Assembly (NCBI GenBank): GCA_047495785.1
Contig: JBLDXI010000009.1
Coordinates: 4,836,001-4,900,000 of the forward strand
Direction: 5' to 3'
DNA from: Lepidodermella squamata
Lineage: Eukaryota; Animalia; Gastrotricha
Length of the DNA: 64,000 nucleotides
Below, piece after piece: positions 34,078-57,169 of this stretch (position 1 is the stretch's first letter; every line of letters starts with the position of its first letter). Under the pieces are notes generated by a model. It worked only from the letters and a program-made list of their open reading frames with translations, did no database searches and was not told the origin of the DNA. Made by a program: the position numbers and the translations under genes.

Positions 34078-36903
34078 TCAAGTTGCGTTAGATGTCGGAG
34101 ATTTTTCTGGTATCGGACTTTTTGCTATAGAGGACCGGCTTTGGGAGCCAGCGGATTGTTTGCCATTTTCAGAGTCTTGATGCGATATTCTGGCTCTGGC
34201 TTGGCCTCGTCTGAAATAAAATCATCTCAGTGAAGTAATGTCAACTGGAGAAAGAACTCACTTCATTAGGTAAATTGCAACACCGATCGCCACTCCGACT
34301 ACGGCTAGACATCCTACAACGATGAGTAGGATAGCCCACCAAGTTAGAGCTCCGTAGTTCAGCCTAGAAGTCACTGTTGTTCCATGCAGGAGGTCTCCAT
34401 GCCCATCATCATGCCCATCAGTCGCCAATGAGGAGCAATCGACGTCAATCTCATACTCCGCCCCAGTTATCACAACATATCCTGGGGTTGTAATCTCCAT
34501 CTGGTGAGGATCGTTGTAGACCTGTTTAAGATCAGCAAGGTGCGGATCGATGGTTGAGTAACTTGACTTGACCGTCGCACCGTGAGAATCGACCGCGCCG
34601 TGGGAATCTGTATCTTTCGCGTGGCATTTCACGTCAACCTTCGGTGGAGAGGCTCCGTTTTTGTATATCGTCGTCGAGTTCTGGCAAATCATCGTACATA
34701 AGTGATCATCAGAAATGCCATGTCCGTCCCCGTGAGAATCTTCCCCAGCTTTCGTCGTGTAACCATGGTGATAGTCAATCGTGACTCCAGAGTCATGTTT
34801 TTCTCCATGACCTGTATCGTCGTGGGATGACTTGGTACTAGCTTCACTGCCATGCGGTTCAGTTGCTTTTTGAGCATCTGGCGATGGGGCATCTCCAAAT
34901 ACCAATTTTGTCGTTGTAGCCGTAGAGGCTTTGACAGATTCATGAGCTGAAGAAGTGGTCGCCTGTGTCGTGGTTGTAGTAGTGATTGAAGTTGCGACGG
35001 TCACTGCTTGGGTCTGAGCAGTTGTAGTTTCTGCTGCTGAACTTGCAAATGTGACAAGCCTCACATCAGGAGCTTTTGAAGTAGTTGTGGTAGTTGGCGT
35101 TGTTGTGGTCGATATTGTCGTAGTCGTGGGTTGAGTGGTCGTTGTCGTAGTCGTAGGTGGAGTGGTTTTTGTCGTTGTAGTTGCTGGAGTAGTCGTTGTA
35201 GTTGTCGATGTGGTCGGGGTAGTGGTTGTCGAAGAACTGGTAGTAGCCGCAGATGAGATCACAGCTTGAGCCACTATAAAACAGGGTCGATATATTATTT
35301 TCGCATGTTCATTGTCTCATACTCAATTGATTAGGGAAACAACAAATTTTGATGTTAAATTTAAACAAGACTCCCTAAGGAGTATTTACCTTCATGGGAG
35401 GATTAGCCTTAACAAATCTCACACAATGTTACTCGAATAACTCTAGTAAGCCCGATGAAATAAATCCTTACCTTCTGTCAGCAGGCGTTGAATGATTGAA
35501 GCTGGCTTGGTAGTAGTCGTAGTCGTGGTCATTGTCGTAGTTGTAGTCGTTGTCGGTCTGGTTGTGGTGGTAGTAGTTGTGGTAGTAGTTGTCCTAGTTG
35601 TACTAGTTGTGCTAGTTGAACTGGTTGTGCTGGTGCTAGTAGCAGGAGTGGTTGTAGATGATTTTGTAGTCGAAGTCGCCAACAATGGTCGCGATGTCGT
35701 AGTCGCAGTGGTCGACGTAGTAGTTTCATTCGTCAAAACTGACTCACATACAAACCGAAAATTCGTATCACTCATCGTCGAACACAGCTTGGCTTGCCAG
35801 CCATAACTTCCATCATCTCTCAGGACCAACGCAGCACATTGATTCGTCTCAGGTGAAATGGGTTCAGAAACTGAAACCCAACCTCGAAAACTCGACTTGA
35901 CCACACTGCTATCAGACTCATACGTCCAAAATCGATTCGTAGCCCCAATCCATACTTGAGGCACTGTGACTTTGACAGGATCCGACAAAATGTAGTTCAA
36001 CAAGCTTTGCCGATCTGATGATTCGATCATAGCCAATCTCCCGCCAAATTTGATGCAAAACACATCAGCATCCCGCCAGGTCAACTCTGGCAGCGCATAC
36101 AGGAATAAACAAGCTCCGTCCAAGCAGAAATTCGATAGTACAACCCCAGCAGCTAGCAGAGTTTGGTTGTTATAGGCCTGGTTCATATCAAATCTGCAGA
36201 CAAAAGGCAGGGGCAGGTTGCAGGATGCGTCTATCCATCGATTGCTAGATTGATCAACCTTAACTGCGGAACAAGAACCGCCAACAGTTGGCCGGCCCAA
36301 CATCCAGTTATCATAGGCTGATTTCTGGGTTGAAAATGCTAGACTGTTGAAGTTAGACCCACAAAACTCGCCGGGACTCCCTGAGCAGGGCAAGGTGCAA
36401 CTTGAACCAGGTGATCGCCAGGAGTAGGATGAGACACAGTAACACATTACTCCAAGCATCACAGCAGCATAAGGAGCAGTCTTGCTACATTGATCGATGC
36501 ATTTCGAGACGCTTAACGAGTCAGAGTAACTTCCGGTATCTTGTAGGGCTGAATCGTCAATTGACAACTGGTCATTACAGCCTTGACCTCTGAGTAAGGA
36601 ATTATCAGCAGCCCATCGCCATGTTGATTGAACATATTTCAGCCCGACGAGGACACGGCTCCAGCCTAGCTGCTCGATCGAATTCGCAAAAAACCTCTGT
36701 TCATCGGAGGATTTCGGAGCGGAAAGGCGGCGCTGCTGGGCTGTGCAGTAAGAAGCAGCGTCTGAATAGGATTTTACGTTCGAATTCTCGTAGAATGAAA
36801 AGCATTTTCCGTTGAAGAATTGGTCTTTCAGAGGATCCGGGCATAATTGACCACAAACTATCCCGAGTATAGCAGCAGTCACGCCTAGTCTGAGAACCAT
36901 CAT
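34078..36903 (-). CDS. CTLD(WSC-inserted)-CTLD mucin-stalk membrane lectin A (exons 36903-35472, 35273-34262, 34210-34078)
   Basis: Signal; CTLD motifs (C..F, YC, LVGL, WRW, WID.SC..LPFVC); WSC Cys pattern; second CTLD with VWIG; Thr-rich stalk; His-rich segment; TM WWAILLIVVG. Confidence 0.88.
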
Positions 36904-38441
36904 AATATTATGAAAAAAATCTAGGAAACAATGCACTCCATTTAGCTTCAAGTTCAGGCTGAATAATTCAATGACTGGAAGCCTAAAAGGGAGTAGGAAA
37001 TCAGACAACCACCAGCCCAACAGCTGATATATTTTGCTCCAGCCATTCAGTAGTAAAAAAGCAATCGAAAGATGTACAAAAGAGTTGTTATTAGGCGTAG
37101 ACAGCGTTGGGCATGCATGTTTGTGTGTCGAAGCGCATCGCTCTTGATCGATGACGCGTAGAATACCAATTGTTGCCCGGCAACAAACGCGTGTGAGCGC
37201 CCAACAGTTCGATATCGATGACACACAACGATGGTAAGAGAAAAATGTAGCCGTTAAATAAAAAAACAGCAATCATAGTGGTGATGTCCCTAGATTTAAG
37301 TCAAAAGCATGTAATGCCCACGGGTATCGCTCATACGTTGTCTAAAACCATTCATTGGTATTCGCATTGAGTTCGTGTTGAGGGAACTGGAACTCTCCTG
37401 CATTGTTCTAAAGTGTGCTACGTCGGCTGTTTTCGAGTTTTAGATTTCAGCTTTCAGCAGGATAAAATTATCAGTTTGCGAAGCATTGGTTTAATGCGCA
37501 CAAATAAAAGGGATCAAATCAGTAGCCACTTCTCATTTCGCTCACCGGATTTGCTCACTGCCAGGGCACCACGATTTTGTAGATATTGGTTATGGAGCCA
37601 CGTCGCTGAGTTCAGCGTACCATTCCTTGGCGGAGTTTGACAGCAGAAATTAAAAAAATTCCATATTGAACTTCCAACTGCGTCAAGTTGCTCCAAAATT
37701 GGAGGGCGGTTTGGGCATACGTTAGACCTGAAAAAACATTTACTTATACTTCTACTTTATTTAGGTATTACTTGATTTTTGAGCATGAAATCAGACAAAT
37801 TTTGAATATCAGTAAATTAGGCCGTAACGTGGTTCAGGGTACTCCCAGGGCCCTAATGGAGGGGAAATCACACTGAAAGCCCACCCCAATTAGGGTAATT
37901 TCTTTCTGGTGAATAATTCCGTCCTCCAATATGGGCGATCAGTCAGTCTTAAATGCATTGCCGAGCATTCTTTTCCAGAGAAACGGTTTCAGTGAGCACC
38001 TTGTTTTCTTGTGCGACTTTTGTTCTCACAAATTCACACATTCTCACAATTCGAACCTATCATTGATCGATGATTTTCGGAGTAAACCTTCAAAACTGTT
38101 ATTTAGCTCGAAGCCTTTTATCCTTATAGCAATTGTATCCAAAATCGTTTTCAAGACGCTGATTCATTATTTTACACTTTTGGTCATGGGACCATCCCGG
38201 ATAAAAGTTGAGGAGCACCTGATCAGAAATCTCTGCAGGTTATTAATGTTTCCTTTACTTCTTACTTCTGCCGCTTGTTTTTAGGGGTTGAGCAATATAC
38301 ATCTCAGAATTCAGAATTCATCGGTTACATTAGCGGCTCATCCTTTCAAACGCACAGCGACGGAATATTACTCTCTTGACTGGCCATTTTAGGATATAAG
38401 CAGGGTCAAATCATTCTCAGCAACTGCCAGCTTTCTATGCT

Positions 38442-38772
38442 TTAGGCGTTATTGATTGTGCCCCTGATAGCCGTTGACTTGCTGTACCGAGCGTTTTCCT
38501 CGGCCTCTTCTTCACGGGCGTTATTGATTGTGCCCCTGATAGCCGTTGACTTGCTGTACCGAGCGTTTTCCTCGGCCTCTTCTTCACGGGCGTTATTGAT
38601 TGTGCCCCTGATAGCCGTTGACTTGCTGTACCGAGCGTTTTCCTCGGCCTCTTCCTGTCGAGCTTGAATCGCCAAGACAGCGAAACATGCCTACAGTGAG
38701 CAGATGAATGAATAGCTATCATCCAGCATAACTACTTACCCCTAGAAGGGTGATAGCAACGAGCTTGTTCAT
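38442..38772 (-). CDS. Secreted multi-copy peptide precursor, 93 aa (exons 38772-38740, 38690-38442)
   Basis: Spliced: MNKLVAITLLG/ACFAVLAIQA signal, then 3 x R(Q/E)EEAEENAR-YSKSTAIRGTINNA; GTAAGT...CTGTAG intron, phase 0. Confidence 0.8.
38445..38654. repeat. 72-bp near-perfect tandem repeat x ~3 (coding)
   Basis: Units start at 38445, 38517 and 38589. Confidence 0.95.
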
Positions 38773-40061
38773 TTTGAAAAATGGAAAATAAATTGTATGA
38801 AATTATCAAAGTGTTTTGGAAAATGCATTTTTGAGCCATTTTGCAGTGTTATTTATCGGCGTTGCAGCGGCATCTGTGTTAACAAGGAGCGCTTGCTGTT
38901 AAAACAGATGCCGGTGATGATTAACGCGATTCAGGTGCTTGAAATATGAGGAATTTTTCATCTCACACATATCATTGTTTAATTTGCGCCTACAAACTTA
39001 TTTACCGGCGCTAACAGACACTTCTTCGCAGTCGAATCGTAGTATTGTAATAATTCCGAAAGAATATCATCTGAGTCAACAAAGCTGCTTTTTTCATTAA
39101 TTTCTTGCGCATAGCGCTACCTCAGTATTCGACGAAGCGGTACTTCGTTTTTGACGAAAATTCGTCACGGACAGTGAATCTTGAATACCAGCATTTTCTG
39201 AAACACCTGAAAAATACTCGCAATCTGGAATAAGCCGTTGCGCAAGTCTAGCGAGAATTTGATCAGCAATATCGAAGCAGAGCACCCAACATTTTGTCCT
39301 TAGCGTTCTTCGCCTTCTTGAAAATCCGCTTTTTCTCGCCTCAGCCTTATCAGCCGAAATTGACCGTCTTCATTGATAACACATTACAGCGCTAGGTTAG
39401 CCAATATCATTTTTTGTAAGAATATGCCGCAATAAGGACGCCAAAATTGCGCCAAAACCCAAAAATTGAACTTAGACATTTTTGCAGCGAAACAAGCTCA
39501 TTTATCGACAACTGTTGTATTGAACTAATCATCCTCGAATAGCGAAATTCAGCATGAAATATTATTTTTCGCGCTTTGATTTTTTGGCTAAAATTATTTA
39601 CAATTTACATTGGGAAGCAATTTTGACGTCCTAATGTCCTAACACATTACCTTTGTCCTATCAAGGCTTCTACTTACTCAAGAGTAATAGAGACTGCTAT
39701 GCAACAGATGCATTTTGTATGCATAGTTACGTATTTTTATGCGCTTCAACGAGCTGAATCCTCGCCTTTTAACCGGTGCGTGATCCCGCAAACTAAAGCC
39801 CTCGGTCTGTACGGTGCTTTAACACTTAGACTAATTAACCTGAGCCAATTAGCTGCTTGCGTGTCCGCGAAATAGATTCGGAGTTTAAATTCTCGAGGCT
39901 AAGCTTCAAACGTATTAGGGCCTTTAAGAACCTGGAATTAAGTCCGCTTCTTTAATTATCAAAACTTGTTTTATTGATCAATCTTCTACGCATATAAAAA
40001 CACAGACAAATTAGAAAGCGAATAATCTATAGCATCTACACGTGCCAATTTATACCGTTAT

Positions 40062-40517
40062 TCAACCTCGGAGAGCTTTCTCCAACAGAACAATCTCATG
40101 GGTGAGCTTCGTCAAGCATTCTGTACTTCGCTGAAAATTCTGCTTCGACATTTGACGGTGCAAATCGTTGAATGCCATCATCAGTGCCTTGCTCAACTCT
40201 GCAGTTCCTTTAGCAGTCGAACTAAATAACAATTGCTGCTTCTCCGTCAATGCAGGCAGATGTTCGAGCTTGCTGACTGCTGATTTCAGTTGAACCTCAG
40301 CCTCTGCGAACTCCACGGCGCAGGAAGATTGTTGAAGCTGTTTCAAAAACACTCGACGAAATTCGCTCAGAACTTGGTTGAACTTATTGATGCTGCCAAC
40401 ATAACGATCTAGCGACTTACCATCGCTTAGCGTCGTAGCTTCGTTGAATAAATAGTAGAGCTCTTTACTATGAGAGATTAGATTTTCAACAATTTTAGCA
40501 TTCGCTTTAGCGGCCAT
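40062..40517 (-). CDS. Hypothetical 151-aa helical protein
   Basis: ATG-initiated ORF with amphipathic helical pattern; AATAAA downstream (~39970 on minus); no recognisable family. Confidence 0.5.
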   Translation of the reverse strand: MAAKANAKIVENLISHSKELYYLFNEATTLSDGKSLDRYVGSINKFNQVLSEFRRVFLKQLQQSSCAVEFAEAEVQLKSAVSKLEHLPALTEKQQLLFSSTAKGTAELSKALMMAFNDLHRQMSKQNFQRSTECLTKLTHEIVLLEKALRG

Positions 40518-41408
40518 CTTTTCGACAAAAATGTGTACCTAAATCAAAAGAATAATTTGTAAGAAAGCGCAAATTACGTGTCTCCAGGCATTATTTATTA
40601 ATTTGAAATCAAATTATTTTCTTGCTGTTATTGGAATATTGCGCTAGCCAGTGTTTACCACCCCACATCCTAGCGACTTCGATCAATAAAACTTGCACTA
40701 AGCTGTGTTGCTAGAAAGTTCTTCTGATCTCTATAATGCATGATGGACCCAGCTTAAATTAACCACTTAATAAAGGAAGACGCGCCAAGTGTAACAATCT
40801 AGAGCTCATAAATAATGGACTAGCAAAAATCGGTTATGGAAGGATTTGGATGCAAATTTCACCTTGAGCCGCGAGCTCAAGTCGTATTCAGGATGCAACC
40901 TCTGCTATGGCAACTTGCACTCAATTTTTTCGTATCTGAACTCCACAAAGTCTATTCTATAGGCATTTTTCACACTTTTTAACTCGTGCGCTTTATTTGA
41001 AGTTCATCAGCAGTAAGTTGCGATGATTGAATAAAATGTGAAGAATCAAATCGTCCCTAACACCGAACACATTCGGAATGATTGCCGGATAATATCGGAG
41101 ATCCGGTGCACGAGAATCGCTGATCGAGTTAAAACTGACATAAATTACATCATTGTTCGACATCACCATGTTCAGTGAATCGGTTGTCAGTGAATTACCA
41201 GGTTTGATCGGAGCGTATAAAAACGCGGAGGCATTGTTGTCACCCAATTATTTATTGGGATAATTAGGATAATTTATTGAGACTTGCCTTGGGATTCCCG
41301 CTAATTTGAAATGAGCAGACGTAGGCAGAGGTGGATTATCGCACATTTCCGTCACATTTGCAATCAAAAGCGCCTACTTGGTTGAAATTTGGCGAGTTTA
41401 AAGAAACC

Positions 41409-42038
41409 ATGACAAAATATTCACAGAATTCCCTACTTTGCAAGGTATAGTTTCCGCAAACGAATACCGCTTCTTTGAGGACATGTAGTCCATTTATACT
41501 TCATGGATCATGGATACTCAATTTTTTTAATACCTTTACATATTTCCATCTAAAATATTTTTCCTCCAAGGTGTGTGGCCAGAAAACAGATGACTCTCTG
41601 AGGTGTGGAGCAAAGGTCTGTGAAGCTTGTAAGGTAATGCCTCCATTAATACCCTTCACTCCAAAATCTACATTATTACACATATATACTGTACAGAAGT
41701 TTTTCCAGCGAAATTACGACAAATCTGTGGAACTGAAATGTTCGGGTCATATTTCACCCGATGACGCGCTGAAATGCAGCGATCGAACTTTTCGAAGAAG
41801 CTGCAGAGGTTGCCGTCTAACGAAATGTTACCAAGTTGGCATGCGAACCCCAAATGCTAACCGGGCCCGAAGAGGTAGCTGTGTCAAATATCAGACAGGT
41901 CGCTCATCGATGATTCCTACCAATCACTTGCTATCGATTCATGAAGCGATGTTGGTGAATTTCTATGTTTCTCTTCTACTTGGCATGGTCACGGATGACT
42001 CAAAGCGAGATGGGGACAATGAAGGCGTCCGTTTTTAA
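41409..42038 (+). CDS. Nuclear-receptor-type C4 zinc-finger protein apparently lacking a ligand-binding domain (exons 41409-41444, 41571-41633, 41697-42038; ~146 aa)
   Basis: Spliced: CKVCG...CEACKKFFQR...C...C...RRSCRGCRLTKCYQVGM, the canonical NR DNA-binding domain pattern. Confidence 0.82.
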
Positions 42039-42380
42039 CAATATCCAAACAGAACATGAAAATATGTCCTAACATGTCATTTGTGTCTTTCGATTTTTGC
42101 ATAATTTTGCCCACTTAAAATTGAGCTTCATGTCCTTAATTATCGATTGTTAAGACAATTTAATTTTTGCTCTGCAATGGCGTACACATTTTCAGGACTA
42201 TTACGTACTAGAAATTTTATTCTATAAACAGGTTTTACAAGGCTCAGGCGAGTCGACTTTATTCCATGTCAATCAATCCTACTAATTGAGTCATACTTTG
42301 AAACATTGACATTTATTTGCGGCCTTTTGTAAACAGAAATGTAACAAGCCTTTAGAAAATAATAGCTTGAAAAAATGAGT

Positions 42381-42763
42381 CTATGATACACAGAATTGAC
42401 GTATCAAAGCTACTCGTTTCTCCGCCGGTTGCTGCAGACAATTCCTAGTCCGTGGAGTCTTTGCCAGATGCTGAAAAGGAAAACTTGAATAAATTAAAGT
42501 TAAAGTTAAAAAACGCCACTTACCCCAAAGCATTTGTAGCATTCGGAAACTGTAATTGCATCCAAATTATGGTCAAGGTAGTCCAAGATGTATGCCAGGT
42601 CGTCTAACGTCATATTCTGCAAATCTATCACGCTGCTGGCTCTGGAAGGACCATAGGATCCTACTGCGACTCCACTCCTCAGAAATAGCTTCGACCTCCT
42701 CTGACATTCGATATTCGAAAATAGCGCGAATGCAACCGTAAACACTGCTAGTAATGTCTTCAT
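42381..42763 (-). CDS. Dispersed, intron-containing member 18 of the secreted Cys-motif family (exons 42763-42524, 42470-42381; 109 aa)
   Basis: Signal; TVSECYKCFG|GTAAGT..TTTCAG|HLAKTPRTRNCLQQPAEKRVALIRQFCVS*; TATAAAA ~42820 on minus. Confidence 0.82.
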
Positions 42764-43431
42764 GGCCTTGTCTGAATTTATGAGCTGAAAAAATGATATT
42801 GCACTTGTAAAACGGCTTTTTATAGCTTGAATCGAGCGCGGGCGAAATCCCGGTTGAGATTTCCGGCTTACAAGTGACCGGACCGGATATTTTTAGGCCG
42901 ATGAAGCTTGTTCTTTTCGTCGCATTAATCTAGGGCGGTTTAGTAGAAATTTATACATCGCAGCGGCCACTTATATCGCAAAACTTCCAGAATTTAGTGT
43001 AGGCAGGAAGCGTGGGCGCATTTATTACTGATTCTGCCCGCCGGCATCGCTTGTAATCGGTCATGCGCGACTGATTTGTCTCTACGTCTTGCTTACTGGC
43101 GGCCACCAGTGCTTGTCAAATTCTTAGTCCACAGTCTATCAGCGATAATAGTAGATTCGACCATCATCGAGAACAGATATAAATTCAACATTTTATTTTT
43201 CGGATAGGTGATGTATAAGAAAGAACAGGGAGTTTTCAGCTAGAAAAAAATGAGTCGGATACGGGAATAGATACAAGGTACGAAAATCTAAAAAATCCCC
43301 GAATGCCGAAAGATATGAAAGTAATGGCAGTCGGAAAGAGGTGAGAGGTCATATAAGACAACAATTTTGAGTTTCAGTAAAGGAATTTCTAGGAGTTTCT
43401 AGGTTCGAACTGAGCAGGAGTTAGGTCGATA

Positions 43432-44854
43432 TCAAATAGCATCGCCCGAACATACGAATCGGCCATCAGCTACTTCATTACAGCTAGCCGTCTGCCACCC
43501 TTCACCATGAGCCGTAACAGCGAATAAGGTGCATTGATTCACATCAGGCATTTCCGGCTCATTTGTCGCTGGCAACCACGCTTGATTCGCGCCACTCACC
43601 AGTGTGACATTCTCAAAAGCTGCGTCAAACCAGCCATGGTTTGTCGCGCCGATCCAAGCTTGCATTGATCCGCCATTTCCAGCCAGACGACGGCCAATGT
43701 CGTACAGCATAGTGTTGATAAGTTCTTGCCGGTCGTTGTTTTCGATTTTGGCGAGGCGACCTCCATAACGGGCGCAGAATTTGTCAGCGTCAAACCAAGT
43801 CATCTTCGGGTTCGTGTAGAGATGGTAGCAAGGTCCGTTTGAGGCACAGGCCACTCGTTCAACGGCTAGAGGAATCTTTTGGGTGCGATTTCGAGTGTTC
43901 TTCATAAAACCTGGAAATATCATGCCATTTTAGTGCTTAATTCTAAAAAAACTCAGATTTTGTGATTCGACGAGACCATGAAGAATTTGAATGGAAAATC
44001 ATTCACTCGGAAATACTTTAAAAATTCCCCAACAATTAGTTTCGGAAAATTCTGGATAGGAATTTAGAAAATTTAGAAAAATGCTTCAAATGCTTACCGA
44101 ATTTGCAAATGAAAGGTAGCGCCAAGTTGCAGCTGGTATCTACCCAATAATTTTCCGCAGCATCCAGAACAATAGCAGCACAATCGCCACCAAGAGCTGG
44201 CCTGCCAGGGGCCCAGTTGGAAAAAGAATCCTCCGCCAGGGCATAAGTATAACTGCTAAAGGGCCCGCCACAGCTTTCATTCTTAGTGCTACCGAAGCAC
44301 TGCAGGTTGCAATTATCATTCGCCGATGGCCAATCGAATTCGTTAGCGGAACAACGGCAAAATTGACCACCTTGGAGAGAAGCAAATAATTTTGTGTCTC
44401 CGGTTTGCGCCAAGCAGAAGGCTGAACATTTCGCAGCGTTCATATTCGAGGCCTGAAGGAAATGAACATTTTTGAAGTCTGATGATGCGTCGTAGCAGCC
44501 TTGACCTCGGAGTAGCGTTTCGTCGGAAATCCATCTCCAAGCGGATTGGCGAAATCTCGGGGAAATGGCGAGTTTTGCCCAGCTTTGCGATTTCATCTCC
44601 TTTGCGATGTAAGCTCTTTCGTTCGATGAGTAGAGACTTGCAAGCCGATGGCCTTTCCCAAATCGCTGGCAGTGAGCAATCGCTTGGTCATAATCGAAAG
44701 GGCCGTCGGCTTCCTTCCTCGGCATGGAAAGTTCTTGGAGTGAGTAGCACTTCCCATTATCTTCAAAAAGCTTCCAGTTCCGTGCGGATTGGGGGCATCT
44801 GAGGCTCTGAGTCGAAGAAATTAACGTCCCCGTAATAAAGAGGATTAATTGCAT
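43432..44854 (-). CDS. Secreted CTLD(WSC-inserted)-CTLD lectin B, no stalk or TM (exons 44854-44098, 43910-43432)
   Basis: Same domain order as lectin A; stop codon directly after second CTLD (RFVCSGDAI*). Confidence 0.85.
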
Positions 44855-45575
44855 TTTTCTTATGAAGAAATGATATCAAACTGCGACGGAAGTCTCAGTT
44901 CCTTATGTATTGTTTGTCAGTCGCGATATTGCACTGGCTTGCAATGTATTTTGTGTTTGTATTAGGTGATTACTAATTCATGGTATTCCCCGCCGCATGA
45001 TAATATAGTTTAGAGGCCGATATCGAATTTTATCACCTGTCGCGTGAATATGTTGTGAGAGCGCAGTGACTAAAAACAGCAGATGAGTGCGGCAATCTCT
45101 GATGATATCCATACAAGCATTTAGAATTTAAAAGATGTTTATTACATTGTAATCGCTCAGCACATCATCATCGATGTTCTGCATGAGGTTGATACAACTT
45201 TCACTAGCAGTGCCAAATATATGAACTCATACGCCGGATTAGCGAAAAATAGCAACATAGGACTATACTCTGGTAATATACAACGCCGACCATCTCAACA
45301 ATGACACGTGTTAAAAAAACGATTCCGCGTCCCTCATCGACGTTAATTTTTATTGTTGACCGATAAACAGCAATCACAGGAATCATTTTTTTCAAGCGAT
45401 GGCTTCAGCAAGTCGCACATTTTTTCACGATAATATCAGTCTAATAGTAATCCATCAGTATTCTATATTATGGGATGGGCCAAGGAAGACGTGCGAAAAG
45501 TTTCAGCCCGGTGCTCAGTGTGTGGAACGGCGAATGATCTAAAATGGCTATCCCGTCCACCTATTGATAAAAATA

Positions 45576-45986
45576 CCGTACTGCCCGAAAAGCCAGTCAG
45601 CCTCGTATAAAAGCCGCCTCAAATATAAGACGGGGCTCTAGGCTCATTGCAACTAATAAAGGTCAGATTTGGGTCGGGTCGCCCACGCATGTATCATCAT
45701 TTCATGATTTATTGATTAATTTCGAAATAGTTTTAAGGAATTCGAATTCTACTACGTCATCACCATCATCGCCATCTCATCAGGATAAAAAACTGAGCCT
45801 TTGCCGATATAATTAGAGGCCAATTCATGGGGACTGGAAGTGTTGTATAGCGAAATGTGATGAGTTGAAGAGGGTTCGAAGTAATAAAGGTCAGGCCTCA
45901 AAGAAAGAGCAGTCTCAAATATAAGACTGGGTTTCGACTTGATTTGAAAAAAATGAAGGGCAGGGCCAACATTTCGGGCAGTACGG
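45576..45986. mobile_element. Non-autonomous Tc1/mariner-pogo-type MITE (~411 bp)
   Basis: Perfect 15-bp TIRs ccgtactgcccgaaa / tttcgggcagtacgg flanked by TA on both sides; internal direct repeats ctcaaatataagac and taataaaggtcag. Confidence 0.8.
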
Positions 45987-46937
45987 TAAGCTGAGTTTCA
46001 TATAAGATGCGATAACTCTTTATATATGGCTCTCCAGTAGCACACACTTGGCTTTGAAATGAAGATCTGCGCAAGTAGTTTGATATCAAATTAAGACAAG
46101 CGAGAGGCAGGAAACGCATGGTTACTTCAGCTTCGATGATTAGCGGTAGCTACTAAAATCTGTAGTTGAATCCTGCCGTCCTGCTGTATCAATCAAGTAA
46201 TGGAAAGATGGAACGTAAAATAATTGAATATTTTGCTAAAATTCTCATTTTTTATTATGGGACTCATTCCTGGCAAATGGGTACAGGCCAGAGGCCAATA
46301 GCTTCAATTTCAGCAAATTAACTGAATAATTCGAGAAATACCTACATCAACTTCTTGAGATGTCTCGAGAAGAAAACAAAGAGACTTGACAACGAATGGC
46401 CTTAGGTCACCCTCTGCAAACAGCCACTGCGCACTATAGTGTCCTCCCATCTTGAATATAACGGGAAATCAATTTTTATAGGTTTTTTACTGTCCTTTGG
46501 TTTTTTTCTTTGTAGTTGGAATTTTTCTATTTTTGGCTCACAATTGTGTTCATCGAAACGGTCTCTCATTCAGTGTCTTAGAACTGCAGCAACGGACCGC
46601 TTCCATCAGAATGTCTTTAAGATTCAAGATTAGAAAAACTATCAGTGTCGGCGCTATGCTTGTGACTAATCGCGATGATTCCAACGGTCATTACCAATAG
46701 CAATTGGCATTGTTGCACCGATGCGTCATCAACGCGCTTTTTTGTCGCATCGCTGCATCGCCCGGCAACGAGCGTACACCGCGCGCAGTTACTAGCACTA
46801 CCCAGCTTCCAATCGATCGACTGCCTACCAACGTCGCGTAAACAAACACATAGACGCAAGCGCTACAACAATAGCGGCTGGCAGCAGTAGTAGTTTTTTA
46901 TCACCGAACGAAATAACGATATTTTTTCTGCATAATA

Positions 46938-49509
46938 ATGCTGTCAATTTTGATTGTAACCGCAAGCCTTGTCCTCACCACAACTTTGGCTCAGCGTCCG
47001 TTTTGCCCTGAGACGGATCTCCTGAATCGAGGCGATGCTCAATGCTACGAATTCGCCGAAGACAAAACTGTCCAAACCTACGACGATGCTGTCTTGTTCT
47101 GCCAGAATAAAAACAAACAATTGGCTAATATTGAATCTCAAAGGCAGCTGAAATTCTTCGCAGACAAGATGCGGGAGAAACTCTGGTCACAAGTGTTTGT
47201 TGGACTGAAGTACTTGAAAACCGGTTGGAAATGGGTTGAGACTGATTTGCCGCTACGAAGCCAAGGTTGCCAGATGTCGACCTATTCCGAAGAATCTGGT
47301 TACCTCAGCACAATCGATCGTTCAATGACCGTTGAGAAATGCATAAATTACTGCTCTGGTAACGCTAATCTCTACGCAGCTGTTCAACAGGGCCATTTTT
47401 GCTACTGTTCAAACTACTTCATCTGGCCAACTTCGGCTTCGAACTGTACGATTCCTTGTTCTGGGTCTTCGGATCAGGTTTGCGGCGGAACCTTGGAGAG
47501 CAACACTTATTCAGCTGCTGATGGCTCGTATGACAATTGGATGAACAACAGGCCGACTGTTTATGGCAACTGTGCTGCGATAAGCGTTGATCGAGTCAAC
47601 AACATGTGGGTTGACTTGGGCTGCTCGGTCAACTTGCCATACATTTGCAAATTCGGTGAGTTCATTTCACAGTTTTAAGATACCCAACGATCAAAGAAGG
47701 ATCAGCGCTTGAGTAGTAATCATATCAGACATTTCAGCGTTAGATCAAAGCTAGATCAATATTAGCGCATTACCCATAGATTTGATCTTATTTTGATCAA
47801 ATGAAGCTCAAATTACATAGAATAATCTAGGTTTGAGCATTTTTCCTCTTGGTTTATTTGACCTGCGAATTTCGGACTTAAGAAAGGAAAAGAGCCCAAT
47901 TTCCTAACTTTTATTATCTGCTCACCCGTACTAATGTTTTCTGTTTTTCCAGGTGGTGAAACGATCAGTGTAGCTACAGATGATGCCGACGGTTTCCAAT
48001 GCGGTGACGGCATCTGCTATTATTTGTACTCAAGCAAACCTGCAAGTTGGGTCAACGCCCAGCGTTTCTGCATGGCAAAAGGTGGGAAACTTGCTACGGT
48101 CGATAAAGAGATCCGCCAAGAGATGGTTAACCGCCTCATTTTCTCGTCGAATCTCCGCGCTGAGAATCAAATTTGGATCGGAGCTGTCAACTACCAATGG
48201 TTCCTTGGCTCTGGATCTCAATTGGCTTTTGATGGTTGGATCTCTGCGAATGAGCCCGTTGCGCCTGAGACATATCCCTGCGCCGCAACTGCTGTGACCT
48301 ACGACGGCAAATTTGGTCTGAAAACTACAAAATGTGACGACTTGGTCGAAGGTGCGAACCGTTTCATCTGTGCCTCGCCTGCTGTTGGAGTTGACTTGCC
48401 CCCTGATATGACAACCACTCCTACTACGACGACCACGACCAGGCCAACGACTACCCGGACCACAACTACGACCTCGACTACAACAACCACTACAACAACT
48501 ACTACAACCACCACCCCAACTACAACTACAACAACACCTACAACAACACCTACAACAACTACAAGCACTTCTACAACGACTACTCCAGAGCCAACAACAA
48601 CGGAAGAGCCAACGACTACCACAGGTAAATTCCCTCTTCGTGACTAAAATATTAGATTAGTAATACGGCCTTTATCCAACGTTAAAGAACCCACGACGTC
48701 TACAACAACCACTTCAACCACCACATCAACAAGTACCACAACCCCCACCACAACAACTCCCACAACTACGACTAGCACTACTACCACAACAGGTGAATAT
48801 CCCGTGTTTTTGACCCCTCATCCCTATTTTTTACTTATTTCTACTTTGATCCCTCTATAATTTCGTTTTCCTCATTACAGAGCCTACGACAACAACTAGC
48901 ACCACGACAACCACAACTCGAGCACCAACTACCACAACTACAACAGTCAGGCCTACTACAACCACAGCGAAACCGACCACTACTGTCCGCATGTGTAATG
49001 CAACTTGCCGAAACGCTACAACTGGCAATTCGACAATTTACGAATGTTATGCCCGTTTCGCGACTTCAACTCAAGCTCCTGTAACCACCCGGGTGAATAA
49101 CTCATCAGGGACAACTAACATCGCACAAACAACGACAGCCAGGCCTACGACTGTTAAATCTAACGTGACTACTACAACTAAAATGTCGACGATCTACAGC
49201 GAGTGGTACGAATCGGAAGCGCCTTGTGGAGTTCTTTTGACTACGACTACCATTCAAAGTACAACAACAACAACTGATGCTGTGCAGGATCAAGGAGAAC
49301 CTCAAGCACTCTCCGCTACGAGCGAGACCCCGAAAAAATCTGCACTGCCTTGGTGGGCTATTCTTTTGATCGCCGTTGGTGGCGTGGTTGTGCTGGGCGT
49401 GATAGTTGGTGCGATAGTCTACGCCCTGAAAAAGCGGGCAATCGGTCAAGTGGATCCGAACAATATGCCAGAGACTGCTCGATCAATCGAAACTGCAAGA
49501 AAATCGTGA
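46938..49509 (+). CDS. CTLD(WSC-inserted)-CTLD mucin-stalk membrane lectin C (exons 46938-47655, 47953-48624, 48688-48792, 48881-49509)
   Basis: Paralog of A, B and D; phase-1 introns restore one reading frame; TM PWWAILLIAVGG; short tail. Confidence 0.88.
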
Positions 49510-50787
49510 AAGACTGACTTCGCTTAGAATTTTCAAATTTTACCCTCTAGTTTATTGATATTTCAACTCAAAAAATGAACATTCAAAAGCCTTGATTTGA
49601 GCTCCCGTTTGTGATTATTCTGTGTAAAGTCTTTCCCAAATTTGATGTAAATATGAGCCGGTTTGTTTTGGGAAAGAATAGGCCTCGATTACTCTCGCCT
49701 TTATTCTTGGCGATCAAATCACCCGTTAAACGTTTTGTTGGCAGCCAAACCCTCTCATCTTTCATCATTGGCTCTCGTTATTCGTTCAACGTTGTAAAGC
49801 TTGTAGATAATGTCTCAAAGCGTTAACCCTTTATGGATGTACATCTGTTACAAAAACCATGCAACCAATTTTTATACTGAAATTTTGATGAACACAAATT
49901 AAAACAAATGAAGAAATGTGTGGGAACCTTGCCAAATTTTCAAGCGGATTTCGACCATCGAATAGGATGGCTGTGTCTAACTTCGATTACATCGTAACGC
50001 GGAGCATGGAGCTTATCGATTATAAGTTGATGTAAAATTTAGTGCTTGAACTTGTTATTTTCTCTACCAATAAGCCTGTCAATCAAAGATCCCACCTTTC
50101 GACCCAAATATGGATATCGTCGCTCGTCGCAAGCAGACAAAAACAAAAACAACAAAATATGGAAATTGTTATACAAATGCACTAAAAGATCGGAATATTT
50201 TCTTTTATTTTGCAATTGCTCATCTCGCAGACCCATTTATCAGAAAAAATATATTGTATCATTTGTTTGAAAATTCACAATTTTAGTCATCTACACTCGC
50301 AAGCAGCAGCAACATTAAACCAATCGATTTTTCATAAATTCAGCAAAAATATATAGCATTAGAGTATTTTATACAATTTCAAATCTATTTACACAGATAA
50401 ATTGCACATAATTAAACAACGATTTTCCATCACAGATTGCAGGAGCATCACATTAGAAAATAGAATTATTATACGGATCTTAACAAAAGAAATCGATTTG
50501 TATACGAAGTGTAGGAAGTATCGCAAGCTAAATCCGATGCGTAAGACGAATCGATGGGCAGCCTCCCTTCCTATAATAATTTGCAAGGTGTTTATTGCAC
50601 GTGATGCAGTTAGACACTGCTCTAAAGTGGGTGACCATTAATCATTAATGAGAACTAAGTATTAAGCAAGAGGCGCAGTGCTAGACACGTAAACAAGATT
50701 CTTAATTGGTATCGCTTCTGAGGGCAGAAACCTAGGTACAAAAGGAGGAGCAAAAGAGCGAGCTGAAAAACGAAACAAAGAAAATCA

Positions 50788-53717
50788 CTAAACGTCTAAC
50801 AGGGTGTCTGGTTTTTCAGCTTCAACGGGAGGAGTAGGTGCCCGAGGCGTGTTCGATTTCGGCGTCGACGGTGCAGTCGGAGAGACGCGGCTAGCAGACC
50901 GGTTAGACATAGGCCGCGCTTTGTATTGCTTCTGGGTACCGGAGTTGCCGGTAGACTCACTCTTATGCTCACCGGATATTGGCATAACCATTGTCACTTC
51001 ACGCTGGGGATGGCCTTTCGGATTAGCCGTGCTCGGCCTAACCTGCGGCCTGTCTTTCCTGTAACAATTTTCAAAACATCTTGGATGAAAGCTGATTTAT
51101 CCAAAATTAACTCACTTGATGAGTAGGACAGCGACTCCAACAGCAACAATAATAACAATCATAGCAGCAAGGACAATAAGGAGGATACCCCACCATGGGA
51201 CTGAGGACATGGTCATCGAATTCGAATCTGAATTTCCGCCTTTCTGAGTATTCGCATATGGATTGTAAACATTAGGATCAATTTGGGCTTGTGGTGCAGT
51301 AACTTCTATCCTTGGCTGGACAGTCACTCCACTCAATAGTTCGCAATCTATCTCAAGGTCGTACTGAGAGCTGTAGACATACATTCCCATACTATTACGG
51401 CCGTCGTCGTTGCTCCTAGGGACAGGGCGGGATGATGGTTGCGTGCCCCAAGGATCGCGTTGCCAGCATTCGATATCAACCGTGAGGTTATTATTCCCCA
51501 ACCGGCCAATCCAAGTGATGTTTCGGCAAGTTGCTGGGCATAACGCAGCTGGAGGTTTCGTGATGATTGGCAGCCTCTTGGTAGTTATCTTCACCATCAA
51601 AGGTGTCGAAGTTTGACTTGACGATGTAGTTGTAGTGGGGGTGCTTGTACTTGTGCTAGTAGTCGTAGAGGTGGTGGTTGTTGAAGTGCTTGTAGTAGTT
51701 GGAGTAGTGGTTGAAGTCGACGTTGAAGTTGAAGTGCTCGGGGTGGTTGTTGTAGAAGTTGTTGACGTTGAGGTGGTTGTAGTAGGGCTCGTAGCCGCTT
51801 CCGTTCTAGTAGTTGTCGTAGGTTCAGTTGTGGTCGTAGTTGATGTCGTAGTAGTCGGCCGAGTTGTGGTGGTCGGCTCTGAAAGAGAAAAATACCCAAT
51901 GAAATTCAGTCAAGAAATCCTATTAAGCTTTAAGCGGTTTCATCACACGATTTAAGGGAAGCATTATAGGGTTAGAGCGTGAAGCATCGGGATTGAGGCG
52001 AGAGGGGGGTAGCAGGACGTTTCCAGGGGAGTGAAAGAACCTTCAGTAGTGGTGGTGGTAGTAGTAGAAGTGGTAGTTGTGGGCGTGGTAGTAGTAGTAG
52101 TAGTAGAAGTTGAAGTAGAAGTAGAAGTGCTAGTAGAAGTGCTAGTACTAGGGGTGGTAGTCGTACTTGTAGTAGTAGTAGGAGTTGAAGTGGTGGTAGT
52201 ACTGGTACTGGTACTGGTACTTGTACTTGTGCTGGTGGAGGTGGAGGTAGTCGTAGTACGCTCAGGGGTCGTAGTCGTTGTTTCTTCCTCCCAAACTGGG
52301 TAATCAATCGGAGGGGCTGTTTCAACCACTGCTTAGTTAAAATAGCATCAAATTAGGATCAAACCACCACGTGAAAAAATGTAAAAACACTCAAAATGAT
52401 CAGCTTACCCGGGACATCGGTAGCCACAACCGGTTTTTGAGTGGTCACGTCCACTAATGGTAGCGGGAACACTTCGGGCGGTCTTTCAGCCTTAATGTTA
52501 GGCCAGTAGTCGATCGTAGGGGCAATTGTTGAACTTGCACCTGGTGCCAAGCCAGAGCAAATGAAGCGATTGGTGACATCTGCCAAAGAATCGCATTTCT
52601 TTGACTTCCAACCGTAATTCCCATCTGAGTTCACAATCAAACCAACACAAGGATTCGCATCAGGTAGATTAGGTCCGTCAGACGATAGCCAGCCATTGAA
52701 TGTATTAACAGCCCCATCTGAGAAGTACCAGTCACGATTCGTAGCCCCAATCCAGGCTTGTTCGATATTTCCAGACGATGCGAATAGAAGAGCATTGATC
52801 GTATCCTGTCGGTCCAAGCTTTCAATCGAAGCTAATCGGCCGCCATTTCTTTTACAAAATCGATCCGCCTCCGGCCAGGTGAGTTGAGGAGTCGAATATA
52901 GGCTGAAGCAAGCATTCCGGCTGCAAGTCATAGTTTCAACCCCTTGGTCTGTCGCGTTGTTGATCAGCTCGAAGCGGCAGAAAAAGGGCAAGGCGAGATT
53001 ACAACTGGTATCAACCCAAAAGTTGTCGATCTTGTCAATTTGAATCGCGGCGCAACTTCCGCCAACTGTTGGCCGACCAGGTTTCCAGTTGTCGAAAACT
53101 TCCTCAGCCGTAGAGAAGATGTTGCTCGAAAATATATTTCCGCAGAGTTGCTCCTCAGAGCCAGAACACGGCATGGAGCAGTTGGAGTTGGGTTGCCGCC
53201 ACGTGTAGTTCTGAGAACAGTAGCATAGCGATCCAGCTTGGACTGCCGCGTACAAATTGCGAGATTTCGCACAGAAGTCGATGCATTTATCAATGGTCAT
53301 TGTGGCTAGGAACTTGCTTCTCATCCCCGACCGTTCGTCATAAGCATTTTCATTACAACCCTGGCCTCGAACTAGAGTGTGATCAGCGATCCACTTCCAG
53401 GCAGATTTTTTGTACCGCAACCCGATCAGAGCGTTGTTCCAAGATAGGATTGTCATAGTCCCAGCGAGAAATTGTTGCTCGTCAGAGGTTTTCGCCGTAG
53501 CCAGGTGTTTTCCGCGAGATGTACAGTAAGACTCGGCTTCGTCGTAAGTCAACTCAGGCATACCCTCCATAGGCTCGCCCCTGTCGATGAATTCATAGCA
53601 ATGAGTGCCAAATAACTGCTCGATGTTAGGATCAGCGCATTGCAAATCTTGACCGAGGGCTGTGGGTTGTAAGAAAATTGCGAGGAACCCAAGGAGTAAC
53701 CACCGTCCTGACCTCAT
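50788..53717 (-). CDS. CTLD(WSC-inserted)-CTLD mucin-stalk membrane lectin D (exons 53717-52409, 52328-52041, 51878-51116, 51058-50788)
   Basis: Signal MRSGRWLLLGFLAIFLQPTALG; same domain order; T/S stalk; TM PWWGILLIV; Pro/Ser tail ending TLLDV. Confidence 0.87.
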
Positions 53718-56005: not shown

Positions 56006-56260
56006 TCACACGTACAGGTTTCCGAATGGTCCAATTTTATCGGCGAATGACCCAACATTTTCGTTATTCGGCCGCATAAGTACTGATCCAAGTTCTCCAG
56101 CGCCGTCAAATTTCGACGTTGCAGCATGACTTTGATGCTTTCTCAGAATATCGCCTATTCTGAGACGAATTCGAAGTGGAAGTTTCTGGCCTGATGATGA
56201 GGCAGCCATAGTCGAAAGCAGCAGTAGTAATGCTGATAGTAAGGCTTGGAATTTGTTCAT
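56006..56260 (-). CDS. Small secreted Cys-free protein, paralog 1
   Basis: Signal MNKFQALLSALLLLLSTMAA; KLPLRIRLRIGDILRK; duplicate at 57474-57728. Confidence 0.8.
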   Translation of the reverse strand: MNKFQALLSALLLLLSTMAASSSGQKLPLRIRLRIGDILRKHQSHAATSKFDGAGELGSVLMRPNNENVGSFADKIGPFGNLYV

Positions 56261-57149: not shown

Positions 57150-57169
57150 CCTAACCCTAACCCTAACCC
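57150..57169. repeat. Short interstitial (CCCTAA)n telomere-like tract
   Basis: cctaaccctaaccctaaccc. Confidence 0.5.

What the first reader, a model, noticed from the sequence alone, without database searches (positions are those of the whole stretch)
34078..53717. WSC domain nested inside a C-type lectin domain in four paralogs
In all four genes the first CTLD is interrupted right after its W(R/K)W motif (e.g. WRWAADNSLL) by a ~90-aa WSC-type module (GC...C..C....YAA...C.C...C..PC.G...CG). The CTLD then resumes with (Y/F)xNW...RP...C...W(I/V)D..C...LP(F/Y).C. This is a domain insertion into the CTLD long-loop region rather than a tandem fusion. EPN/QPD is replaced by RP(T/A), so glycan recognition may have shifted to the WSC insert (WSC domains are known carbohydrate binders). 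I am not aware of this nested architecture being described.
Basis: partly seen in the sequence, partly recalled or inferred. Interest (0 to 1): 0.78.

Follow-up and report, generated by a model that had tools for sequence, protein, structure and literature searches.

The report
WSC domain nested inside C-type lectin fold
Four neighbouring genes of a small invertebrate (probably a gastrotrich) encode cell-surface proteins in which a complete WSC domain is inserted into a loop of a C-type lectin-like domain. I found no paper describing this two-in-one arrangement, and its ligand and function are untested.

Summary
In all four genes the N-terminal piece matches Pfam Lectin_C positions 3-62. An 87-91 aa WSC domain follows, and the C-terminal piece then matches Lectin_C positions 68-107. 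A family profile aligns one uninterrupted DEC-205 CTLD on both sides of the insert and Kremen's WSC in the middle.

An AlphaFold2 model (pLDDT 91.9) superposes on solved single CTLDs across residues 1-223 (Z up to 19.5, rmsd 1.2 Å). The insert matches Kremen's WSC.

The family is larger than four. At least 15 copies exist in this genome, which is 15 of its 26 detected WSC domains. One-to-one orthologues occur in unnamed public assemblies, and one member is in the annelid Owenia fusiformis.

The calcium/sugar motifs are lost in all 23 members. Two paralogs keep a shared phase-1 intron at the WSC/C-half junction. No paper describing the arrangement was found.

Function is inferred only: mostly mucin-stalked, membrane-anchored, calcium-independent recognition or adhesion proteins. 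This is a new variant of known kinds and of moderate interest. The scan noted the same architecture on the adjacent window (s1-384576).

The parts
36847..36903 (-). w1 predicted signal peptide (MMVLRLGVTAAILGIVCGQ)
   Evidence: Hydrophobic N-terminus just before the first CTLD cysteine. By eye; no predictor was run.
36592..36843 (-). w1 CTLD N-half (beta0/beta1, alpha1, alpha2, beta2, WRW)
   Evidence: Pfam Lectin_C profile positions 3-62, 20.2 bits when scanned alone.
36328..36591 (-). w1 WSC insert (88 aa, 8 Cys)
   Evidence: Pfam WSC 35.7 bits, above the 27.8 cut-off.
36190..36327 (-). w1 CTLD C-half (YDNW, RPT, C2, WID, C3, C4)
   Evidence: Lectin_C profile positions 68-107, 22.2 bits when scanned alone.
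35743..36084 (-). w1 second, uninterrupted CTLD
   Evidence: Lectin_C best stretch, profile positions 3-106.
34948..35733 (-). w1 Thr-rich mucin-like stalk, two blocks with a probable intron near 35320-35500
   Evidence: Translations. The exon joins are not determined.
34261..34341 (-). w1 transmembrane segment; the frame stops 2 residues after it
   Evidence: WWAILLIVVGCLAVVGVAIGVAIYLMK followed by a stop.
44804..44854 (-). w2 predicted signal peptide
   Evidence: by eye.
44510..44797 (-). w2 CTLD N-half
   Evidence: Lectin_C profile positions 5-62, 16.8 bits when scanned alone. The WIGL-equivalent is degraded to AISP.
44237..44509 (-). w2 WSC insert (91 aa)
   Evidence: Pfam WSC 25.8 bits, just under the cut-off. 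All 8 Cys are kept.
44099..44236 (-). w2 CTLD C-half
   Evidence: Lectin_C profile positions 68-107, 26.4 bits.
43450..43806 (-). w2 second CTLD (separate exon). No Thr-rich or TM exon lies within about 700 nt downstream, so w2 is probably secreted.
46938..46994 (+). w3 predicted signal peptide
   Evidence: by eye.
47004..47255 (+). w3 CTLD N-half
   Evidence: Lectin_C profile positions 3-60, 28.6 bits.
47256..47516 (+). w3 WSC insert (87 aa)
   Evidence: Pfam WSC 46.4 bits.
47517..47654 (+). w3 CTLD C-half
   Evidence: Lectin_C profile positions 68-107, 22.9 bits.
48039..48371 (+). w3 second CTLD (exon 2)
48411..48990 (+). w3 Thr-rich stalk (several exons or blocks)
49351..49428 (+). w3 transmembrane segment, followed by a 26-aa cytoplasmic tail that runs to 49506
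53652..53717 (-). w4 predicted signal peptide (MRSGRWLLLGFLAIFLQPTALG)
   Evidence: by eye.
53370..53639 (-). w4 CTLD N-half
   Evidence: Lectin_C profile positions 3-62, 31.8 bits. In the model: strands at 7-10, 13-18, 69-76 and 81-83, helices at 32-41 and 52-64.
53109..53369 (-). w4 WSC insert (87 aa)
   Evidence: Pfam WSC 46.4 bits. Model residues 92-176 form one helix plus strands. Foldseek matches Kremen's WSC at 27% identity.
52971..53108 (-). w4 CTLD C-half
   Evidence: Lectin_C profile positions 68-107, 18.3 bits. Model strands at 196-200, 208-211 and 219-222.
52557..52886 (-). w4 second CTLD
   Evidence: Lectin_C profile positions 2-105.
51700..52287 (-). w4 Thr-rich stalk (two blocks)
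51115..51195 (-). w4 transmembrane segment; the frame stops 2 residues after it

Best explanation
These genes belong to one family of secreted-pathway proteins found in spiralian animals.

Architecture. Each protein starts with a signal peptide. A composite head follows: a long-form C-type lectin-like domain (CTLD) with a complete WSC (PAN/Apple-like) domain grafted into the first part of its long-loop region. The graft sits between the WxW strand and the (Y/F)xNW...RP(T/S/A) segment, which corresponds to the EPN calcium/sugar motif of classical lectins. A second, uninterrupted CTLD comes next. In most members (w1, w3 and w4 here) a Thr-rich, presumably O-glycosylated stalk, a small three-cysteine juxtamembrane motif and one transmembrane helix follow, with little or no cytoplasmic tail. 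w2 appears to lack the stalk and anchor.

Shown. The nesting is shown at sequence and predicted-structure level. So are the loss of the calcium/sugar motifs, the family size, orthologues in other assemblies and in an annelid, and a shared phase-1 intron at the 3' junction of the insert.

Inferred. The head binds its ligand without the classical calcium site. The CTLD probably serves as a rigid scaffold, and the WSC, alone or with the neighbouring CTLD surface, does the binding. The proteins therefore act as mucin-like surface recognition or adhesion molecules that have diversified by tandem duplication. Because most lack a tail, they are unlikely to signal on their own. The arrangement most likely arose once, by insertion of a WSC exon into a phase-1 intron of a CTLD gene, before gastrotrichs and annelids diverged.
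For: - Split Pfam hits: Lectin_C 3-62, then WSC, then Lectin_C 68-107, in all four genes.
- A family profile aligns one uninterrupted DEC-205 CTLD on both sides of the insert and Kremen1's WSC in the middle.
- 29 canonical CTLDs of the same genome align with a single gap over the WSC.
- The AF2 model has pLDDT 91.9 and pTM 0.80. Solved CTLDs superpose over model range 1-223 with Z 17-19.5 and TM-score per target 0.75-0.83. Kremen's WSC matches the insert.
- Fourteen cysteines are invariant in the 12 aligned paralogs of this genome.
- None of 23 members has EPN/QPD or the Asn of WND, whereas 18 of 29 canonical CTLDs of the genome have E-P-x and 14 of 29 have x-N-D.
- At least 15 nested copies exist, which is 15 of the genome's 26 WSC hits.
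- Eleven 50%-identity cluster representatives in 1.84 billion proteins have the full nested match. One is from Owenia fusiformis and has the same junctions and a second CTLD.
- A tree of the CTLD columns alone and a tree of the WSC columns alone each need only one change of the 'nested' label.
- L011 and L016 share a phase-1 intron six codons before the W of (Y/F)xNW.
- Thr-rich blocks, TM segments and near-absent tails were read from translations.
Against: - No expression, localisation or binding data exist, so the function is entirely inferred.
- The first AF2 run, using only 12 nested sequences, was poor (pLDDT 61, C-half about 31). The confident model needed canonical CTLD rows in the alignment, which favours a CTLD solution.
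- I had no model coordinates, so I did not measure the WSC/CTLD interface or the position of the WSC relative to the old sugar site.
- Isolated fungal WSC domains lack an obvious glycan pocket (PMC9024836), and Kremen's WSC binds protein, so 'glycan binder' is not secure.
- Support for placing Owenia with the rest in the CTLD tree is weak (SH-aLRT 59).
- Signal peptides, TM segments and exon joins were judged by eye, without RNA data.
- The intron could have been gained rather than inherited.
Confidence: 0.6

Rival explanations
1. The nesting is real, but the WSC is not the binding module. The two calcium-independent CTLDs bind protein or other ligands through secondary sites, as many non-lectin CTLDs do. 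On this reading the WSC is a structural spacer, an oligomerisation module or a clustering module.
For: The C-half of the split CTLD is the best-conserved segment, with mean pairwise identity 0.43 against 0.37 for the WSC and 0.32 for the N-half. Fungal Wsc1's WSC is proposed to act through aromatic clusters and sensor clustering rather than a glycan pocket (PMC9024836). Many CTLDs bind non-sugar ligands (established knowledge; reviews listed).
Against: The WSC keeps all 8 cysteines and the CG motif in every member. It also carries a hypervariable loop, residues about 96-112 of the w4 head, as expected of a specificity determinant. In addition, 15 of the genome's 26 WSC domains are kept in this context.
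Confidence: 0.25
2. The proteins are animal counterparts of the fungal Wsc1-type wall sensors. A WSC-bearing head is lodged in the cuticle or glycocalyx, a glycosylated Thr-rich stalk acts as a spring, and a single TM helix reports mechanical stress.
For: The overall order is the same as in yeast Wsc1: WSC head, Ser/Thr-rich stalk, single TM helix (PMC9024836, PMC2885430).
Against: w1, w4 and the orthologue P0012 end one or two residues after the TM helix, so they have no tail to signal with. w2 seems to lack the stalk and anchor. The WSC here is embedded in a CTLD and followed by another CTLD, unlike the fungal sensors. No homology exists outside the WSC itself.
Confidence: 0.07
3. The arrangement is an artefact. 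Either an assembly chimera (the probable source genome was assembled from amplified DNA), or a WSC exon that is never joined to the CTLD exons, or decaying pseudogenes.
For: The probable source assembly used multiple displacement amplification, which makes chimeric reads (PMC11660948). The WSC of w2 scores below Pfam's cut-off and its WIGL motif is degraded.
Against: The same uninterrupted reading frame occurs in 13 paralogs on four contigs. It also occurs in independently assembled proteins from ENA, Logan and NCBI, including a 62-Mb Owenia scaffold. Fourteen cysteines are invariant in the 12 aligned paralogs of this genome, and paralogs pair one-to-one with orthologues.
Confidence: 0.02

Closest known systems
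Polycystin-1 / sea-urchin REJ ectodomains (PKD1 family)
   Same: Animal surface proteins that combine a WSC domain and a C-type lectin-like domain in one ectodomain (PMC1934368, PMC9672506, found).
   Different: There the two domains lie side by side, separated by other modules, in huge 11-TM proteins with REJ, GPS and PLAT parts. Here the WSC lies inside the CTLD, the proteins are small with a single TM helix, and no PKD, REJ or GPS domain was found.
Kremen1/2 (Kringle-WSC-CUB type I receptors)
   Same: Closest solved WSC structure: profile E about 1e-10 over positions 85-170 and Foldseek 27% identity. Also a type I membrane protein.
   Different: Kremen's WSC is a free-standing module between a Kringle and a CUB domain and binds Dickkopf/LRP6. 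It has no CTLD and no mucin stalk. This genome does have Kringle-WSC-CTLD tandem genes elsewhere, and they are distinct from the nested family.
Fungal Wsc1-type cell-wall integrity sensors
   Same: WSC head, Ser/Thr-rich glycosylated stalk, single TM helix (PMC9024836, PMC2885430).
   Different: The fungal head is a bare WSC and the cytoplasmic tail is needed for signalling. Here the WSC is nested in a CTLD, a second CTLD follows, and most members have essentially no tail.
Mucin-stalked type I CTLD receptors of vertebrates (thrombomodulin, CD93, endosialin, CLEC14A; CTLD group XIV). Recalled from established knowledge, not tested here.
   Same: N-terminal non-calcium CTLD, mucin-like stalk, single TM helix, short tail.
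   Different: These have no WSC and no whole-domain insertion in the CTLD, and sushi/EGF modules replace the second CTLD. No specific sequence relationship was seen.
Bivalve CTLD proteins that carry a WSC domain
   Same: A CTLD and a WSC in one lophotrochozoan protein, listed among architectures unique to bivalves (PMC10140915).
   Different: The paper does not say the WSC lies inside the CTLD, and its supplements hold no further detail. Whether they are nested is unknown.

Membership tests
C-type lectin-like domain (CTLD) superfamily, Pfam PF00059 | Significant match to the Lectin_C profile over the whole domain | tested here: met
   The exon-1 proteins that hold only the split CTLD score 37.3 bits (w2) and 38.7 bits (w3) against a 22.6 cut-off. 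The halves cover profile positions 3-62 and 68-107.
C-type lectin-like domain (CTLD) superfamily, Pfam PF00059 | Four core cysteines C1-C4, plus C0/C0' in long-form domains | tested here: met
   C1, C14, C39, C196, C213 and C221 of the w4 head are invariant in 12 paralogs. C39 and C221 are invariant across all 52 rows including canonical CTLDs, and C196 and C213 are at least 90% conserved.
C-type lectin-like domain (CTLD) superfamily, Pfam PF00059 | The CTLD double-loop fold | tested here: met
   The predicted structure superposes on codakine, ASGR1, CL-K1 and others with Z 17-19.5 and rmsd 1.2-2.1 Å. This is a prediction, not an experiment.
Classical calcium-dependent C-type lectin CRD | EPN or QPD motif plus WND motif (calcium site 2 ligands) | tested here: not met
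   None of 23 nested members has EPN/QPD; they carry RPT, RPS, RPA and similar, and Owenia has EPR. None of 23 has Asn in the WND position. The second CTLDs also lack WND.
WSC domain, Pfam PF01822 | Profile match above the curated cut-off | tested here: met
   w1 35.7, w3 46.4 and w4 46.4 bits against 27.8. w2 scores 25.8 bits, just below. Fifteen nested WSC hits are above the cut-off genome-wide.
WSC domain, Pfam PF01822 | Eight conserved cysteines and the CG(G) motif; PAN/Apple-like fold | tested here: met
   C95, C119, C123, C139, C141, C154, C158, C166 and G167 are invariant. The model shows one helix plus strands. Foldseek matches Kremen's WSC. The disulfide pattern itself is not testable here.
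Fungal Wsc-type wall-stress sensors | Cytoplasmic tail that couples to signalling | tested here: not met
   w1, w4 and P0012 stop 1-2 residues after the TM helix. w3 has 26 residues with no recognised motif.
Polycystin-1 / REJ family | REJ, GPS/GAIN and PLAT modules and multiple TM helices | tested here: not met
   Pfam finds only Lectin_C and WSC in the four genes and in eight relatives. Each has a single TM segment.

The most novel reading that the evidence does not exclude
An ancient spiralian invention. The calcium/sugar site of a C-type lectin fold was abandoned and a whole WSC domain was grafted into the same long loop. This would create a composite, calcium-independent recognition head in which the CTLD is only a scaffold. 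The head then diversified, through a hypervariable WSC loop and tandem duplication, into a repertoire of surface recognition molecules. It would be the first whole-domain graft reported in the CTLD long loop and a natural precedent for using that loop as an engineering site.
Probability: 0.3. Interest if true: 0.62.

Novelty: new variant of a known kind. Interest (0 to 1): 0.45.

Why it matters
The long-loop region is the part of the C-type lectin fold that normally makes the calcium and sugar site. It is also known for domain swapping and for tolerating variation. A complete, independently folding 87-91-residue domain accommodated in it, and kept with every cysteine across at least 15 paralogs of this genome and in an annelid, suggests that the fold tolerates far larger grafts than loop variation. 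It also gives a natural example of how a lectin scaffold can change its recognition module.

The finding also identifies a sizeable, previously unremarked surface-protein family in gastrotrichs, a phylum with almost no functional genomics. More than half of the genome's detected WSC domains sit in this context.

The practical value is modest until a ligand or an expression site is known.

Tried and rejected
- The first AF2 run, on 12 nested sequences only, gave pLDDT 61 with an unusable C-half. I replaced it with a 52-row alignment (A2).
- The search for homologous proteins found few members in three runs and missed several that the exhaustive search found. Its blanks say little.
I therefore could not read the genomic context or intron structure of the outside relatives, including Owenia.
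- The listing of cluster members gave no names for P0001-P0003.
- The ESM Atlas gave only weak, uninformative neighbours, at most 0.84.
- I checked whether three other WSC loci (L032, L035, L036) were further nested cases, because the family HMM extended into their upstream sequence. They are not: a LamG-like end precedes the WSC and a CTLD follows in later exons.
- I tried to locate the other split CTLD reported by the scan (s1-407516) through a Kringle search. The genome has at least 150 Kringle hits, so I gave up.
- Literature searches for a described nested CTLD/WSC found nothing relevant (supplement search).
- I did not attempt dN/dS among paralogs. At 40-47% protein identity the synonymous sites are saturated.
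- I did not model joined exons. Exon joins for the stalk and TM parts are left undetermined.

Full report
**What is in the window.** The interval 34078-53717 holds four paralogous genes on both strands, with unrelated genes between them. I call them w1 (34.2-36.9 kb, minus strand), w2 (43.4-44.9 kb, minus), w3 (46.9-49.5 kb, plus) and w4 (51.1-53.7 kb, minus). The window is G000:C9:4836001-4900000 of a 121.2-Mb, 151-contig eukaryotic assembly.

Other agents of this scan took the genome for the gastrotrich Lepidodermella squamata. The published assembly of that species has 122 Mb, 157 contigs and 43% GC (PMC11660948). This fits the size and the window's 42-46% GC. I did not test the identity further.

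- Pfam finds Lectin_C and WSC in each gene, with Lectin_C in two or three stretches.
- Scanned alone, the N-terminal pieces match Lectin_C profile positions 3-62 (5-62 in w2, 3-60 in w3). The C-terminal pieces match 68-107 in all four genes.
- About five profile positions are therefore missing exactly where 87-91 residues of WSC lie.
- The reading frame is continuous through all three pieces.
- In an alignment of 12 paralogs, 14 cysteines are invariant. Six are those of a long-form CTLD (C0, C0', C1-C4) and eight are those of a WSC domain. The WxW tryptophans, the GC at the WSC start, the CG near its end, the W of (Y/F)xNW and the P of RP(T/S/A) are also invariant.

**It is a true insertion, not two fragments.**
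- A profile of the family searched against PDB sequences aligns DEC-205 CTLD1 residues 188-266 to profile positions 2-81 and residues 270-312 to positions 175-215. Three residues of a normal CTLD therefore stand where the insert is. Kremen1's WSC aligns to positions 85-170.
- Twenty-nine uninterrupted CTLDs from the same genome align to the nested domains with one clean gap over the WSC. Their 'W.W.DGS...W..(E/Q)P' stretch straddles it.
- AlphaFold2 on the 12 nested sequences alone was poor (pLDDT 61). With 52 rows (12 paralogs, 11 outside relatives, 29 canonical CTLDs) the w4 head gave mean pLDDT 91.9 and pTM 0.80, with no segment under 50.
- Foldseek matched single solved CTLDs over about 220-230 alignment columns, with TM-score per target of 0.75-0.83. 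It matched Kremen's WSC at 27% identity over about 106 columns.
- VIA-align gave Z 17-19.5 and rmsd 1.2-2.1 Å over 116-125 residues, with model range 1-223, for 50 different CTLD entries. The best was codakine 2vuv: Z 19.5, 1.2 Å, 119 of 129 residues.
- In the model the CTLD elements are strands 7-10, 13-18, 69-76 and 81-83, helices 32-41 and 52-64, then strands 196-200, 208-211 and 219-222. Residues 92-176 form one helix and several strands. This fits the PAN/Apple-like WSC fold of yeast Wsc1 and Kremen (PMC9024836).
- Caveat: the canonical rows in the alignment favour a CTLD solution, and I had no coordinates to measure the interface.

**Where the insert sits.** It lies after WxW-x-x-x-x-L and before x-x-x-(Y/F)-x-N-W-x-x-x-R-P-(T/S/A). 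That is the first part of the long-loop region, about 12 residues upstream of the position of the EPN motif. The placement is inferred from the alignments and from established CTLD anatomy.
- None of 23 nested members has EPN/QPD, and none has the Asn of WND. Among the 29 canonical CTLDs of the genome, 18 have E-P-x and 14 have x-N-D.
- The W of WIGL is replaced in 22 of the 23 members.
- The second CTLDs also lack WND.
- These are therefore CTLDs in the broad sense, not classical calcium-dependent lectin domains.

**Size and spread of the family.**
- The genome holds at least 15 nested copies. Eleven lie within about 180 kb of contig C9, one of them 600 nt beyond the window's end. The others are on C31, C32 and C42.
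- These copies account for 15 of the 26 WSC hits in the genome.
- The remaining WSCs lie in side-by-side arrangements with CTLDs or in other contexts.
- An exhaustive profile search of 1.84 billion representatives returned many multi-WSC and multi-CTLD proteins. Among the best 150, only 11 had one continuous match over the whole nested profile. A domain-table check found no further N-half/WSC/C-half triple.
- Only the top 150 of 288 proteins with E at most 1e-30 were visible, so more distant members may exist.
- Most outside members pair one-to-one with paralogs of this genome at roughly 60-70% identity. The expansion therefore predates the split from at least one related species.
- One member, P0129, is an NCBI 'unnamed protein product, partial' of the annelid Owenia fusiformis. 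It has the same junctions (…SQGC… and …YSNW…) and a canonical second CTLD.

**Origin.**
- A tree of the CTLD columns alone puts all 23 nested domains on one side of a branch. SH-aLRT is 59 with Owenia and 90 for the other 22.
- A tree of the WSC part alone separates the 23 nested WSCs from the genome's 10 other WSCs with SH-aLRT 85.
- Both trees are compatible with a single insertion event.
- Two paralogs on different contigs (L011 on C9, L016 on C42) keep an intron at the same place and in the same phase. It is phase 1, six codons before the W of (Y/F)xNW, at the WSC/C-half junction. The other paralogs have no intron there, and none has one at the 5' junction.
- This fits insertion of a WSC exon into a phase-1 intron followed by intron loss, but one surviving intron does not prove it.

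**The rest of the proteins.**
- Each gene starts with a hydrophobic signal-like segment.
- w1, w3 and w4 continue, after the second CTLD, with 60-180 residues of Thr-rich sequence. A short motif with three cysteines and N-glycosylation sequons follows, then a 26-27-residue hydrophobic segment.
- w1, w4 and the outside orthologue P0012 stop one or two residues after that segment. w3 has a 26-residue tail.
- w2 has no stalk or anchor exon within about 700 nt downstream and is probably secreted.
The stalk and TM joins are undetermined.

**What it most likely does.** This section is inference.
- The layout is that of a mucin-stalked surface molecule holding a two-CTLD head away from the membrane.
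- The classical site is gone in both CTLDs, and a WSC sits in the loop that used to form it. The simplest reading is calcium-independent recognition by the WSC or by a composite WSC/CTLD surface, with the CTLD as scaffold.
- WSC domains bind beta-glucan in some fungal proteins and protein in Kremen (PMC9024836), so the ligand class is open.
- A loop just after the first WSC strand (about residues 96-112 of the head) varies in sequence and length among paralogs. It is a candidate specificity determinant.
- Against a dominant role for the WSC, the C-half of the CTLD is the most conserved segment (0.43, against 0.37 for the WSC and 0.32 for the N-half).
- The resemblance to fungal Wsc1 sensors (WSC head, Ser/Thr stalk, TM helix) is striking. 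It is weakened by the near absence of cytoplasmic tails.
- An assembly or annotation artefact is excluded for practical purposes, because the architecture recurs in independent assemblies.

**Novelty.** Full-text searches for WSC with C-type lectin or CTLD, for domain insertion in the long loop, for nested domains, and for the two Pfam accessions together found no description of this arrangement.
- Polycystin-1 and REJ proteins and some bivalve CTLD proteins combine the two domains. Polycystin-1 and REJ have them as separate modules, and the bivalve paper does not say whether the WSC is nested (PMC1934368, PMC9672506, PMC10140915).
- The L. squamata genome paper mentions neither domain.
- Because an Owenia protein with the architecture is public, automatic domain-architecture listings very probably contain it. 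I could not query InterPro.
- The scan itself noted the same architecture on the adjacent window (s1-384576). It also noted a different CTLD of this genome split by a four-domain insert (s1-407516), which I did not locate or test. If that note holds, this genome may have used the CTLD long loop as an insertion site more than once.

**Verdict.** The functional interpretation is plausible but untested. This is a new variant (a nested architecture) built from two well-known domain kinds, and it is of moderate interest.

Noticed in passing
G000 C19:194593-200813, C34:1251307-1258478, C28:870852-881345 (loci L021-L023, L059, L064, L070, L072): The non-nested WSC domains of this genome mostly sit in side-by-side Kringle-WSC-CTLD(-CTLD...) genes. 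These have a Kremen-like Kringle-WSC start followed by C-type lectin-like domains. Their WSCs form a group separate from the nested ones.
   Followed up: partly
L011 (G000:C9:4771354-4775028) and L016 (G000:C42:4194445-4197951): These two paralogs keep a phase-1 intron at the same codon, at the WSC/C-half junction. The other 13 copies have lost it or never had it. It may be a relic of insertion by exon shuffling.
   Followed up: yes
window 34612-34704(-), 48991-59059 region start 48991-49059(+), 51454-51546(-): A short conserved juxtamembrane motif with three cysteines and N-x-T sequons (C..(I/T)C.N.T ... C) lies between the Thr-rich stalk and the TM helix in w1, w3 and w4. It has no Pfam match.
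   Followed up: no
window 41475-42038 (+): An open frame with nuclear-receptor-type zinc-finger strings (C..C ... CRGCRLTKCYQVGM) lies between the lectin genes. It is probably an exon of a nuclear hormone receptor gene.
   Followed up: no
window 38435-38722 (-): An open frame with three near-identical copies of a 24-residue unit (SITPVKKRPRKTLGTASQRLSGAQ).
   Followed up: no
G000 genome-wide: The repertoires of C-type lectin-like domains (150 hits scored of 774 candidates) and of Kringle domains (150 of 214) are very large, many in tandem arrays, for example on C36 and C24.
   Followed up: no
L024 (G000:C7:129476-132721): One WSC domain lies in a single open frame upstream of sequence that looks like a branching-type (GT14-like) glycosyltransferase. 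I judged this by eye and did not scan it.
   Followed up: no
window 32827-33858 (+): A 343-aa open frame with a fibronectin-III-like stretch, a TM segment and a Ser/Pro-rich tail lies just upstream of the finding. It is probably the last exon of an unrelated receptor-like gene.
   Followed up: no
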